Shown here piece after piece: positions 14,260 through 14,489 of a stretch of 64,000 nt of DNA. The stretch lies in the sequence record LR756501.1; one strand, written 5' to 3'. Under the pieces are notes generated by a model, which ran no database searches, was not told the DNA's origin, and saw only the letters and a list, made by a program, of their open reading frames with translations. The stretch's first letter is position 1; each line of letters begins with the position of its first letter. The position numbers were made by a program, and so were the translations under genes.

Positions 14260-14281
14260 ATTTTTAAGAACTTTATTAAAA

Positions 14282-14314
14282 CAAAAAACCCCAAACTTTT
14301 TGAGTTCGGGGTTT
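14282..14314 (-). terminator. Attenuator terminator of the second tRNA operon
   Basis: AAACCCCGAAC...GTTTGGGGTTT followed by TTTG; then boxA-like AGTTCTTAAAA. Confidence 0.85.
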
Positions 14315-14335
14315 TCCGTTATTACTATGTTTCTA

Positions 14336-14431
14336 TCAGCTAACACATAGCAAATCCGTTTCAACCCCGAATGTGGTAAACCACTTGGATGATGAACTAA
14401 AATGTTTACTATGTTTAGATGTCTGTAACAT
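14336..14431 (-). CDS. Leader peptide (31 aa) MLQTSKHSKHFSSSSKWFTTFGVETDLLCVS
   Basis: Codons 5-18 are all S/K/H/F/W; TTCGGGGTT (14363-14371) is complementary to the terminator 5' arm (14305-14313). Confidence 0.85.
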   Translation of the reverse strand: MLQTSKHSKHFSSSSKWFTTFGVETDLLCVS

Positions 14432-14473
14432 GATTTCTATTTTTTTAATATTGTTTGTATTATATCTTTTTAT

Positions 14474-14489
14474 CTTTGTTTTATATATT
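14474..14489 (-). promoter_or_regulatory. Putative promoter motif AATATATAAAACAAAG (copy 2)
   Basis: Identical to 2123-2138. Confidence 0.65.

What the first reader, a model, noticed from the sequence alone, without database searches (positions are those of the whole stretch)
14262..14489. Multi-amino-acid leader-peptide attenuator whose codons match the tRNAs of the operon it controls
Seen in sequence: an unannotated 31-codon ORF (14431-14336, MLQTSKHSKHFSSSSKWFTTFGVETDLLCVS) precedes the second tRNA array. Codons 5-18 are 14 consecutive S/K/H/F/W codons (TCT AAA CAT AGT AAA CAT TTT AGT TCA TCA TCC AAG TGG TTT). The array encodes Ser (4), Lys (5), His (2), Phe (2) and Trp (2) tRNAs plus TrpRS. 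Codons 21-23 carry TTCGGGGTT, the exact complement of the terminator 5' arm AACCCCGAA. An inner helix TTGCTATGT/ACATAGTAA brackets the stop codon, so the antiterminator is one long hairpin covering the second half of the ORF. Established: ribosome-mediated attenuation (trp, his, leu, thr, ilv, pheST) works this way. Inference: a stall on any of five amino acids, whether from starvation or from host anticodon nucleases cutting tRNA, would switch on the phage's replacement tRNAs. I am not aware of this being described for phage tRNA arrays.
Basis: partly seen in the sequence, partly recalled or inferred. Interest (0 to 1): 0.95.

Follow-up and report, generated by a model that had tools for sequence, protein, structure and literature searches.

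The report
Leader-peptide attenuators controlling phage tRNA arrays
A 735-kb phage and its relatives place a short coding "sensor" and a transcription stop signal in front of each block of tRNA genes, and the sensor uses codons for the same amino acids as the tRNAs behind it, so the phage probably makes those tRNAs only when the cell runs short of them.

Summary
The window comes from the 735-kb "uncultured phage" LR756501.1. At 14513-14278 (minus strand) a phage promoter motif is followed by the 31-codon ORF, an intrinsic terminator 19 nt before tRNA-Trp, and mutually exclusive pairings, as in the trp attenuator.

The same genome holds three more such units. Each leader is rich in the amino acids of its own tRNA array:
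- Leu: in this window, 2153-1956.
- Glu/Ile/Met/Gln.
- Thr/Pro/Arg/Gly/Ala/Val.

Nineteen further units were found in other huge-phage contigs. There the tRNAs are grouped differently, and the leader composition follows the grouping (0 of 100,000 shuffles reach the observed match). In 21 of 23 units a 3' segment of the ORF is complementary to the terminator's 5' arm, although the arm sequences differ. The runs of enriched codons end where a stalled ribosome would start to block the antiterminator. A BoxA-like element follows each terminator.

Corrections: the array has one tRNA-Ser, not four, and two tRNAs outside the set. Translation and read-through are untested. I found no published description. 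Verdict: a new variant of ribosome-mediated attenuation.

The parts
14481..14513 (-). Promoter-like motif of unit D: GGAAAAAAGTGACTTTTTTTT-N-AATATATAA. A TATAAT lies further downstream at 14464-14459.
   Evidence: The motif class TGAC(T/A)TTTTT-N5-7-AATATATA precedes all four leaders and about 10 protein genes in the genome. The 16-mer AATATATAAAACAAAG occurs only twice in 735 kb, before leaders C and D. No transcription start site has been mapped.
14336..14431 (-). Leader ORF of unit D, 31 codons plus TGA: MLQTSKHSKHFSSSSKWFTTFGVETDLLCVS
   Evidence: 16 of 30 residues belong to K/W/S/F/H, binomial P 2.8e-4. A close homologue exists in L087.
14378..14419 (-). Control codons 5-18 (S K H S K H F S S S S K W F), region 1 of the attenuator
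   Evidence: This is one of only two 14/14 windows among about 666,000 genome-wide. A ribosome with its A site on codons up to K16/W17 leaves the antiterminator free. This stretch pairs with region 2 before the terminator arm emerges.
14345..14371 (-). Region 2, the antiterminator 5' strand: TTCGGGGTT (14371-14363) and TTGCTATGT (14353-14345)
   Evidence: It pairs with 14330-14304 in the transcript truncated before the terminator's 3' arm, P(paired)=0.96. Duplex energy is -17.3 kcal/mol, P=0.004 against shuffles.
14278..14330 (-). Regions 3 and 4. ACATAGTAA (14330-14322) and the terminator 5' arm AAAACCCCGAAC (14315-14304) form region 3. The loop, the 3' arm GTTTGGGGTTTT (14296-14285) and the T-run to 14278 complete the intrinsic terminator.
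   Evidence: The hairpin is -19 to -23 kcal/mol and dominates the full-length fold. The pattern GGG..TTTT.GTTTT occurs 7 times in 735 kb, and 4 of those are the tRNA-array leaders.
9875..14259 (-). Regulated tRNA array D. It holds Trp, tRNA(UCU) with an insert, His x2, Phe, Lys, Ser(CGA), a Phe-like tRNA, Lys, Lys with an insert, Trp, a Leu(CAG)-like tRNA, and Lys x2. Interspersed are a truncated TrpRS-like ORF (11374-12087) and two endonuclease-like ORFs (9939-10814, 12443-13276).
   Evidence: ARAGORN and Rfam; Pfam and NCBIfam.
14162..14182 (-). Weak BoxA-like copy in unit D (GTTCATTGAAATATTGATTTA), after the first tRNA-Trp. A partial GTTCTTAAAAA lies at 14271-14261.
   Evidence: 4 mismatches to the array motif. 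Better copies exist in units A, B, C and F.
2121..2153 (-). Promoter-like motif of unit C (the Leu array). It includes the same 16-mer AATATATAAAACAAAG (2138-2123).
2029..2097 (-). Leader ORF of unit C: MNNILHINLLNSLCLLGIKLIG*. It has 7 Leu and uses all six Leu codons. TTGATTGGGT (2040-2031) is the antiterminator strand.
   Evidence: Leu enrichment P 6e-4. Using all six codons in 7 draws has P 0.0075 given phage codon usage. The stall window ends at L15/L16. A homologue in L030 also uses all six codons.
1956..1989 (-). Intrinsic terminator of unit C (GACCCAATCAGCAATGATTGGGTTTTTTGTTTTT)
   Evidence: duplex with the ORF 3' end -13.7 kcal/mol, P=0.012.
1933..1953 (-). BoxA-like element of unit C (GTTCTTTAACATTTTGAAATA). 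It starts 3 nt after the terminator T-run.
   Evidence: It matches GYTCTTTAANA exactly. No room is left for a separate promoter.
1240..1784 (-). Regulated tRNA-Leu array: anticodons TAG, GAG, CAA, TAA, TAG

Best explanation
The element is a ribosome-mediated (leader-peptide) transcription attenuator placed in front of a tRNA gene array. It is one member of a family of such units in huge phages predicted to infect Bacteroidetes.

Proposed mechanism:
1. Transcription starts at a phage promoter of the class TGACTTTTTT..AATATATA.
2. A ribosome translates the 31-codon leader.
3. If charged tRNA for Ser, Lys, His, Phe or Trp is short, the ribosome stalls within codons 5-18. This releases region 2 (TTCGGGGTT..TTGCTATGT) from its pairing with the control-codon region.
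4. Region 2 then pairs with region 3 (ACATAGTAA..AACCCCGAA). The terminator hairpin cannot form, and RNA polymerase reads into the array.
5. If decoding is fast, the ribosome runs past codon ~18 to the stop codon and covers or sequesters region 2. The terminator forms 19 nt before the first tRNA.

The product of read-through is tRNA for the amino acids being sensed, plus a TrpRS-like protein. The circuit is therefore a negative-feedback, supply-on-demand controller of decoding capacity. A BoxA-like element after the terminator probably loads Nus factors, so that polymerases that pass the checkpoint transcribe the long untranslated array without further termination.

Shown: the sequence anatomy, its statistics, its conservation, and co-variation with tRNA content. 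Inferred: translation of the leader, stalling, regulated read-through, and the BoxA function.
For: (1) The anatomy is exact at the stated coordinates. The full-length fold has z = -4.35.

(2) Four paralogous units occur in one genome. Their leaders are enriched only in the amino acids of their own array. Diagonal binomial P values are 3e-5, 6e-4, 3e-4 and 1e-4, and no off-diagonal cell is significant. Leaders D and A are the top non-low-complexity 14-codon windows for their amino-acid sets in the whole genome.

(3) Nineteen more units were found in other huge-phage contigs of up to 676 kb.
- Over 23 units x 20 amino acids, leaders carry on average 3.32 codons of an amino acid whose tRNA is in the array, against 0.97 otherwise.
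- Odds ratio 14, P 1e-26 (units are not independent).
- 0 of 100,000 shufflings of arrays among leaders reach the observed match.
- Within one leader type, composition follows gains in the array. Ile tRNA goes with I codons (L033, L049). Glu x4 goes with 4 E (L024). Gln goes with 2-5 Q (L102, L125, L136, L143). A Leu/Asp/Asn/Met/Glu/Tyr array goes with MLLCNLYNMYLNNLEND (L120).

(4) In 21 of 23 units a 3' ORF segment is complementary to the terminator's 5' arm (P<=0.042 against shuffles), although the arms have more than 10 different sequences.

(5) In the transcript truncated before the terminator's 3' arm, the antiterminator forms in all four units. Masking a ribosome footprint shows it stays available for stalls up to Q14/15, L15/16, K16/W17 and T29/C30. 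It is blocked beyond those codons, which is where the enriched runs end.

(6) Before region 3 emerges, region 2 is paired with the control-codon side, P 0.64-0.88.

(7) The Leu leader uses all six Leu codons (P 0.0075), and so does its homologue in L030.

(8) BoxA-like GTTCTTT(G/A)ACA follows the terminators. In unit C and in L030b it begins 2-3 nt after the T-run, so the array can be reached only by read-through.
Against: - There is no experimental evidence that the leader is translated or that read-through varies. The phage is uncultured.
- Leaders A, C and D have no Shine-Dalgarno sequence; F has AAGGAG. This is usual for Bacteroidetes but leaves initiation unproven.
- At equilibrium the full-length RNA forms the terminator wherever the ribosome is placed, so the switch must be kinetic, as in trp.
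- Without any ribosome, the truncated transcript at equilibrium prefers the antiterminator. The untranslated default state is therefore uncertain.
- The codon-level match is imperfect in this unit. Seven leader Ser codons are not read by the only phage tRNA-Ser (CGA). The array also holds a tRNA(UCU) and a Leu(CAG)-like tRNA with no matching enrichment.
- Array B (Asp/Tyr/Ile/Asn/Cys) and the small Pro array have no leader in this genome.
- Related units are partly homologous, so P values from pooled counts overstate independence.
- The fetched loci are truncated, so the array contents are incomplete.
Confidence: 0.85

Rival explanations
1. The architecture is an attenuator, but the signal it senses is amino-acid starvation or the general translational state of the host. 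It would not be the supply of particular tRNAs or their cleavage by host anticodon nucleases. The phage would then raise tRNA and TrpRS output whenever charging falls for any reason.
For: A stalled ribosome cannot tell missing tRNA from uncharged tRNA; this is established for the trp, his and leu leaders. The Ser codons of leader D are read only by host tRNA-Ser, not by the phage tRNA-Ser(CGA). Part of the sensor therefore reports host decoding capacity, which the output cannot restore.
Against: More tRNA does not relieve amino-acid starvation, so the feedback would be futile. Leaders follow the tRNA content of their own array closely and sample many isoacceptor codons, including all six Leu codons. 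That fits sensing of tRNA species. In relatives the Ser codons are matched by array tRNAs Ser(TGA) and Ser(GCT) (L076).
Confidence: 0.2
2. The terminator is a constitutive or leaky insulator that ends a short early transcript. The ORF is not translated or has no regulatory role, and the tRNAs are expressed from another promoter or by unregulated leakage.
For: No translation data exist. Three of the four leaders lack a Shine-Dalgarno sequence. At equilibrium the terminator always wins. A conserved motif lies between terminator and tRNAs, and I first considered it a second promoter.
Against: This does not explain why ORF composition matches and co-varies with the downstream tRNA set in 23 units. 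It does not explain why the ORF 3' end is complementary to ever-changing terminator arms. It does not explain why the enriched runs end at the ribosome-occlusion boundary. The intervening motif matches the BoxA RNA consensus and abuts the T-run in unit C and L030b, leaving no room for a promoter.
Confidence: 0.04
3. The leader RNA senses tRNA directly, like a T-box or another tRNA-binding riboswitch. The codon-like triplets would act as specifiers that pair with anticodons, without translation.
For: T-box leaders control translation-related genes by a terminator/antiterminator choice and read tRNA identity through a codon-like triplet.
Against: No T-box family hit appears in 8000-20000 even at E<=10. 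The leaders are too short, about 150 nt from ATG to T-run. They carry 7 to 25 relevant triplets, all in one reading frame that opens with ATG and closes with a stop codon, in every unit. That is the signature of translation.
Confidence: 0.02
4. The short ORFs encode functional micropeptides, for instance regulators of translation or of tRNA metabolism. The terminator simply ends their mRNA.
For: The ORFs are conserved in relatives, and close pairs have similar peptides (wD and L087).
Against: Within the control run it is the amino-acid set that is kept, not the order (HFSSSSK against HSSFSSK). The 3' part is conserved where it pairs with the terminator. Composition changes with the neighbouring tRNA set. 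Paralogous units A, B-type and C share a terminator and the ..LIG end but have recoded control regions.
Confidence: 0.02

Closest known systems
Leader-peptide transcription attenuators of amino-acid operons (E. coli/Salmonella trpL, hisL, leuL, thrL, ilvL/ivbL, pheL)
   Same: All the working parts are shared: a short leader ORF rich in regulatory codons, regions 1:2, 2:3 and 3:4 with an intrinsic terminator, multi-amino-acid sensing as in thr (Thr, Ile) and ilvGMEDA (Ile, Leu, Val), and a kinetic switch in which the terminator is the more stable fold. Features tested.
   Different: The regulated genes are tRNA genes, not biosynthetic enzymes. The host is a phage genome. Up to six amino acids are sensed by one leader. 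Several units together cover nearly all amino acids. A BoxA-like element follows the terminator. The Rfam Thr_leader model gives only 29.3 bits against a gathering score of 55, so there is no sequence-family membership.
pheST attenuator (pheM leader) and other translation-apparatus genes under attenuation
   Same: A leader peptide senses charged tRNA and controls a component of the decoding machinery, PheRS. Array D also carries a TrpRS-like ORF, and the leader has a Trp codon.
   Different: pheM controls a synthetase for one amino acid. Here the main products are the tRNAs themselves. This comparison rests on my knowledge of the pheST literature and was not tested here.
T-box riboswitches
   Same: They sense the state of a particular tRNA and choose between terminator and antiterminator upstream of translation-related genes.
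   Different: A T-box binds tRNA directly through a specifier loop and a conserved T-box sequence, without translation. No Rfam T-box hit was found, and the triplets here form a translatable ORF.
BoxA/Nus-factor antitermination in rRNA operon leaders
   Same: GTTCTTTAACA (unit C) matches the published consensus GYTCTTTAANA exactly, and GTTCTTTGACA/G (units A, F) matches with one mismatch (PMC5725501). The element sits in the transcribed leader of a stable-RNA operon. The same 21-mer pattern lies 70-80 nt upstream of the 16S start in two genome contigs, one of them Bacteroidetes (titles).
   Different: Here it sits downstream of a regulated terminator and in front of tRNA arrays. Binding of NusB/NusE is untested. 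The consensus used was derived for gamma-proteobacteria.
Phage tRNA gene clusters (T4 and other large phages; the huge phages of Al-Shayeb et al. 2020)
   Same: They are large sets of phage-encoded tRNAs interspersed with homing-endonuclease-like ORFs. The genome is the one reported in PMC7162821.
   Different: That paper does not contain the words 'attenuat' or 'leader'. Nine literature searches found no description of leader-peptide control of phage tRNA genes.

Membership tests
Ribosome-mediated (leader-peptide) transcription attenuator | Short ORF with a start codon in the transcribed leader, between the promoter and the first regulated gene | tested here: met
   The 31-codon ORF at 14431-14336 lies between the promoter motif (14513-14481) and tRNA-Trp (14259). 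The same layout occurs in 3 paralogous and 19 related units.
Ribosome-mediated (leader-peptide) transcription attenuator | Enrichment of codons for the amino acid(s) that relate to the regulated genes | tested here: met
   14/14 S/K/H/F/W codons, one of 2 such windows among about 666,000. Diagonal-only enrichment in the 4x5 matrix. 0 of 100,000 permutations reach the observed match over 23 units.
Ribosome-mediated (leader-peptide) transcription attenuator | Intrinsic terminator (G+C-rich hairpin plus U-tract) upstream of the regulated genes | tested here: met
   Hairpin of -19 to -23 kcal/mol followed by TTTTTTGTTTT at 14315-14278. The simple consensus scan did not list it, so I identified it by folding.
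Ribosome-mediated (leader-peptide) transcription attenuator | Antiterminator (2:3) mutually exclusive with the terminator (3:4) | tested here: met
   TTCGGGGTT/AACCCCGAA plus TTGCTATGT/ACATAGTAA; P(paired) 0.96 in the truncated transcript. Complementarity at P<=0.042 in 21 of 23 units with differing arms.
Ribosome-mediated (leader-peptide) transcription attenuator | Region 1 (control codons) can pair with region 2 (anti-antiterminator) | tested here: met
   Before region 3 emerges, region 2 is paired with the upstream control-codon side, P 0.64-0.88 in all four units. This is prediction only.
Ribosome-mediated (leader-peptide) transcription attenuator | Geometry: a ribosome stalled on control codons permits 2:3, and a ribosome further on prevents it | tested here: met
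   Footprint masking puts the switch at Q14/15, L15/16, K16/W17 and T29/C30, which are the ends of the enriched runs. In silico only.
Ribosome-mediated (leader-peptide) transcription attenuator | The leader is translated, and read-through rises when the cognate aminoacyl-tRNA is limiting | not testable with these tools
   This needs reporter, in vitro transcription-translation, Term-seq or ribosome-profiling data.
Rfam Thr_leader (RF00506) | Score at or above the family gathering threshold | tested here: not met
   29.3 bits against 55, E 0.037, over 14280-14356, mainly the terminator.
T-box riboswitch | Match to the T-box covariance model (specifier loop, T-box sequence) | tested here: not met
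   No T-box hit in 8000-20000 at E<=10.
BoxA (Nus-factor antitermination signal) | Sequence matching the BoxA consensus GYTCTTTAANA in the transcribed leader of a stable-RNA operon | tested here: met
   Unit C GTTCTTTAACA is an exact match. Units A and F have 1 mismatch. Unit D has only weak copies. The motif lies directly upstream of tRNA arrays in more than 10 viral contigs.
BoxA (Nus-factor antitermination signal) | Binding of NusB/NusE and termination-resistant elongation | not testable with these tools
   Biochemical assay needed.

The most novel reading that the evidence does not exclude
Huge phages run a modular surveillance system for decoding capacity that covers nearly the whole genetic code. 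The tRNA genes for all 20 amino acids are split into a few arrays. In this genome four of the arrays (15 amino acids), and in relatives also the Asp/Tyr/Ile/Asn/Cys class, are each gated by their own multi-amino-acid leader peptide. That leader tests the infected cell's ability to read the codons served by its array. A BoxA element then commits the polymerase. Under this reading the phage detects shortage of any tRNA group and answers by making exactly that group. The shortage could come from codon-usage mismatch, from decay of host tRNA during infection, or from host tRNA-cleaving defence nucleases.
Probability: 0.5. Interest if true: 0.93.

Novelty: new variant of a known kind. Interest (0 to 1): 0.88.

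Why it matters
Leader-peptide attenuation is a textbook mechanism, but it is known as a control of amino-acid biosynthesis and of a few synthetase genes. Here the same device appears to control tRNA genes themselves. It does so in a virus, in several copies, with sensor codons matched to the tRNAs behind each copy.

If confirmed, three things follow:
- Huge phages would be shown to regulate their imported translation machinery by demand rather than expressing it constitutively.
- There would be a concrete, testable explanation for why phage tRNAs are grouped into arrays by amino acid.
- It would offer a way to test whether phage tRNAs serve codon-usage compensation or replacement of tRNAs lost to host defence or host shut-off.

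The units are also compact, natural sensors of aminoacyl-tRNA for chosen sets of amino acids, which could be useful as reporters.

Tried and rejected
(1) Equilibrium folding of the full-length leader with a ribosome mask. The terminator is predicted at every ribosome position, so this test is uninformative. I replaced it with folding of the transcript truncated before the terminator's 3' arm.

(2) The motif GTTCTTTGACnTnTTGAAATA as a second promoter with a start site at the tRNA 5' end. I rejected this in favour of BoxA. It matches the BoxA consensus. It abuts the T-run in unit C and L030b. In cellular genomes it is not generally next to tRNAs, but it does occur upstream of 16S and at contig ends.

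(3) A remembered precedent, an attenuator-like leader before E. coli pheV. The 1985 paper could not be retrieved. Direct inspection of MG1655 shows no leader ORF or terminator between yqgA and pheV. I dropped it.

(4) A leader for array B (Asp/Tyr/Ile/Asn/Cys) and for the Pro array in the 735-kb genome. None was found by reading the upstream regions or by the genome-wide window scan. Relatives do have a B-type leader (L030, L108).

(5) The simple terminator scan missed the terminator of the finding.

(6) ARAGORN's intron mode gave doubtful identities for the insert-containing tRNAs. I re-read the anticodon arms by hand, and these assignments (UCU; Leu CAG-like) remain tentative.

(7) DNA similarity search of the phage collection with the region found only the genome itself, a duplicate record, and tRNA matches.

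(8) Nine literature searches found nothing on leader-peptide control of tRNA genes.
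Full report
**Source of the window.** The window is part of LR756501.1, the 735,411-bp "uncultured phage" genome. Window position w corresponds to record position w+193,060. 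Al-Shayeb et al. 2020 described this genome. That paper places the phages above 634 kb in the Mahaphage clade with predicted Bacteroidetes hosts, and it does not contain the words "attenuat" or "leader" (PMC7162821).

**The observation.** Read on the minus strand, the region contains the following, in order.
- A promoter-like motif GGAAAAAAGTGACTTTTTTTT..AATATATAA (14513-14481).
- The ORF ATG..TGA (14431-14336), encoding MLQTSKHSKHFSSSSKWFTTFGVETDLLCVS.
- A hairpin AAAACCCCGAAC/GTTTGGGGTTTT with a T-run (14315-14278).
- tRNA-Trp, 19 nt further on (14259).

The whole leader folds with z = -4.35 against shuffles.

- Lys x5, His x2, Trp x2 and Phe x2 (one atypical) are confirmed.
- There is one tRNA-Ser (CGA), not four.
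- One tRNA has anticodon UCU and a 45-nt insert.
- One Leu(CAG)-like tRNA has a very long variable arm.

The TrpRS-like ORF is truncated: it matches trpS model positions 7-218 of 328, at 120.6 bits, below the cut-off.

**Is it more than chance?** I fetched the whole genome in pieces and scanned all six frames. About 666,000 stop-free 14-codon windows exist. Only two consist entirely of S/K/H/F/W: a poly-Ser tract and this leader.

**The decisive internal replicate.** The genome's 59 ARAGORN tRNAs lie in arrays grouped by amino acid. Three other arrays are preceded by the same arrangement.

| Unit | Leader peptide | tRNAs in the array behind it |
|---|---|---|
| C (this window, 2097-2029) | MNNILHINLLNSLCLLGIKLIG, all six Leu codons | five tRNA-Leu |
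| A | MNFRIINMIQEQMQQIQNLIGGTISY | Glu/Ile(UAU)/Met/Gln |
| F | MLFNSNISVKFTPAPAVAFRRGTGTGTGTCVPAGCGFEGMNG | Thr/Pro/Arg/Gly/Ala/Val |

- Each leader is enriched only in its own array's amino acids. Binomial P values are 3e-5, 6e-4, 3e-4 and 1e-4 on the diagonal, and nothing off it is significant.
- The 16-mer AATATATAAAACAAAG occurs only twice in 735 kb, before leaders C and D.
- The terminator pattern GGG..TTTT.GTTTT occurs seven times, four of them in these units.
- Covering all six Leu codons in seven draws has P = 0.0075 under the phage's own codon usage.

**Relatives.** Two pattern scans of IMG/VR brought in 19 further promoter-ORF-terminator-tRNA units from contigs of up to 676 kb. One scan used the tRNA-array motif and the other the promoter motif.
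- L087 carries a close homologue of the finding, MTYTSKHSKHSSFSSKWFTTFGVETELLCVS.
- L030 and L108 carry the class that is missing in the 735-kb genome: MKNMVNKYNDYCINDKLKMLIG in front of Cys/Asp/Asn/Asn/Tyr.

Where lineages group their tRNAs differently, the leader follows.

| Locus | Leader (control part) | tRNAs in the array |
|---|---|---|
| L120 | MLLCNLYNMYLNNLEND.. | Leu/Asp/Asn/Met/Glu/Tyr |
| L102 | ..TTYTTATTAPQQGAGQGRTAQPRG.. | Thr/Gly/Ala/Gln/Pro/Arg |
| L143 | ..RHMRMHQLQGSRPAGRSG.. | His/Gln/Pro/Arg/Ala/Ser |
| L024 | has four Glu codons | four tRNA-Glu in an otherwise F-type array |
| L033, L049 | have Ile codons | tRNA-Ile in D-type arrays |

- Over 23 units and 20 amino acids, the mean leader count is 3.32 when the tRNA is in the array and 0.97 when it is not.
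- The 2x2 table gives an odds ratio of 14 (P 1e-26; the units are not independent).
- None of 100,000 shufflings of arrays among leaders reaches the observed match.
- The loci are truncated, so some arrays are incomplete.

**Structure and geometry.**
- In all four units of the genome, the transcript truncated just before the terminator's 3' arm folds into an antiterminator. In it a 3' segment of the ORF pairs with the terminator's 5' arm.
- Across 23 units, 21 show such complementarity at P<=0.042 against shuffles. The arms have more than ten different sequences, and the partner always lies in the 3' third of the ORF.
- Masking a 30-nt ribosome footprint codon by codon shows where the antiterminator remains available. 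It stays available for A-site positions up to Q14/15 (A), L15/16 (C), K16/W17 (D) and T29/C30 (F). Beyond those it is blocked. These boundaries coincide with the ends of the enriched codon runs.
- Before region 3 is made, region 2 is predicted to pair with the control-codon side (P 0.64-0.88). All four classical regions are therefore present.
- At equilibrium the full-length RNA always forms the terminator. The switch must be kinetic, as in trp.

**What follows the terminator.** A second motif, GTTCTTTGACnTnTTGAAATA, is specific to the tRNA arrays in this genome. It lies directly upstream of tRNA arrays in many viral contigs.
- It matches the published BoxA consensus GYTCTTTAANA exactly in unit C and with one mismatch in units A and F (PMC5725501).
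- In cellular genomes many hits are in Bacteroidota. Two sit 70-80 nt upstream of 16S, and several lie at contig ends.
- I read it as a BoxA-type Nus-factor loading site.
- In unit C and L030b it starts 2-3 nt after the T-run. The arrays can therefore be reached only by reading through the attenuator.

**Mechanism proposed.** A ribosome translating the leader stalls when charged tRNA for any amino acid of the group is short. The antiterminator then forms and the polymerase passes. BoxA makes the polymerase processive, and the array is transcribed. The products relieve the stall, which closes a negative-feedback loop.
- The anatomy, its statistics and its co-variation are shown.
- Translation, stalling, read-through and BoxA function are inferred.
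- Whether the trigger in nature is codon-usage mismatch, decay of host tRNA, host anticodon nucleases or amino-acid starvation cannot be decided here.
- The mismatch between leader D's Ser codons and the single phage tRNA-Ser(CGA) shows that part of this sensor reads host tRNA.

**Comparison with what is known.**
- The element works like the trp/his/leu/thr/ilv/pheST leaders and meets every structural criterion I could test.
- It is not a sequence member of an Rfam leader family: Thr_leader scores 29.3 bits against 55.
- It is not a T-box: no hit.
- Its targets, tRNA genes in a phage, its breadth of up to six amino acids per leader, its multiplicity and the coupled BoxA are new.
- Nine literature searches found no description.
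- A remembered E. coli pheV precedent did not hold up on inspection.

**Verdict.** This is a real, conserved regulatory element and a new variant of ribosome-mediated attenuation. Confidence in the mechanism is 0.85 and interest is 0.88.

Noticed in passing
window 1933-1953 (unit C); weak copies at 14162-14182 and 14261-14271; record 173983, 187073, 367351 (minus strand): A BoxA-like element GTTCTTT(G/A)ACnTnTTGAAATA lies between each attenuator terminator and the first tRNA. It also lies before tRNA-Cys of array B. It is specific to the tRNA arrays in this genome and is widespread before tRNA arrays in viral contigs.
   Followed up: yes
window 14036-14153, 11186-11273, 1790-1935; record ~173830-173960: Several tRNA or tRNA-like genes carry 17-70-nt insertions in or next to the anticodon arm. 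Several share the motif ACAGCAA(A)ACAAAAC near the 3' end of the insert. The element at 1790-1935 looks like a tRNA with a displaced or permuted acceptor 3' half inside a long-range stem (GATTGC../..GCAATC). How they are processed is unknown, and my anticodon calls (UCU, CAU) are tentative.
   Followed up: partly
window 10990-11100: A tRNA-Leu-like gene has a typical Leu D-arm, the anticodon loop TTCAGCT (anticodon CAG) and a variable region of about 44 nt. It sits in the Lys/Trp/Ser/Phe/His array, not in the Leu array, which lacks a CAG anticodon.
   Followed up: partly
window 9939-10814, 12443-13276, 11374-12087: Endonuclease-like ORFs lie inside the tRNA array: one matches REase_MTES_1575/DUF559, the other has a zinc finger and matches phage endonuclease I. 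They are probably homing endonucleases. The TrpRS-like ORF covers only the N-terminal two-thirds of trpS. I did not look for the missing part.
   Followed up: partly
window 35657-36030: A small array holds tRNA-Pro(GGG) and two near-identical tRNAs that ARAGORN calls with a 2-nt anticodon 'ta' (anticodon loop region ..CTGGATTATTCCAG..). No leader, terminator or BoxA unit lies upstream.
   Followed up: no
record 690585-690738 (+), outside the window (locus L013): Two tandem tRNAs have anticodon CTA (amber suppressors; ARAGORN labels them 'Pyl'). TAG may be read through or recoded at some stage of infection. The leader of L102 ends at a TAG.
   Followed up: no
record 185853-187731 (array B: Asp, Tyr, Ile, Asn, Cys), locus L004: This array has no leader-peptide unit in the 735-kb genome, although relatives (L030, L108) have one (..KYNDYCIND..). 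Leaders A and C contain several Asn and Ile codons, but the enrichment is not significant.
   Followed up: partly
record 188330-187959, 185107-184499, 358869-358498 (minus strand), loci L004 and L007: Translation-related ORFs lie next to the arrays. One is like ribosomal protein L7/L12, one has the N-terminus of an EF-G/GTPase, and one is a small GGQ-motif protein like a release factor or ArfB. I read these from the translations only and ran no family search.
   Followed up: no
record 33669, 69861, 76372, 91903, 243433, 284937, 344593, 362595, 519753, 712843 and the four leaders: A phage promoter-like class (T)GGAAAAAA-N2-3-GAC(T/A)TTTTT-N5-7-AATATATA lies 20-60 nt upstream of ATG codons. Its spacing does not fit a sigma-70 or a Bacteroides -33/-7 promoter. 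Which polymerase or sigma factor reads it is unknown.
   Followed up: partly
units A, C and the B-type units of L030/L108: These leaders share nearly the same terminator (ACCCAATCAG..GATTGGGT) and end in ..L-I-G, but their control regions are recoded. The units therefore look like duplicates whose sensor codons were re-tuned to a new array.
   Followed up: partly
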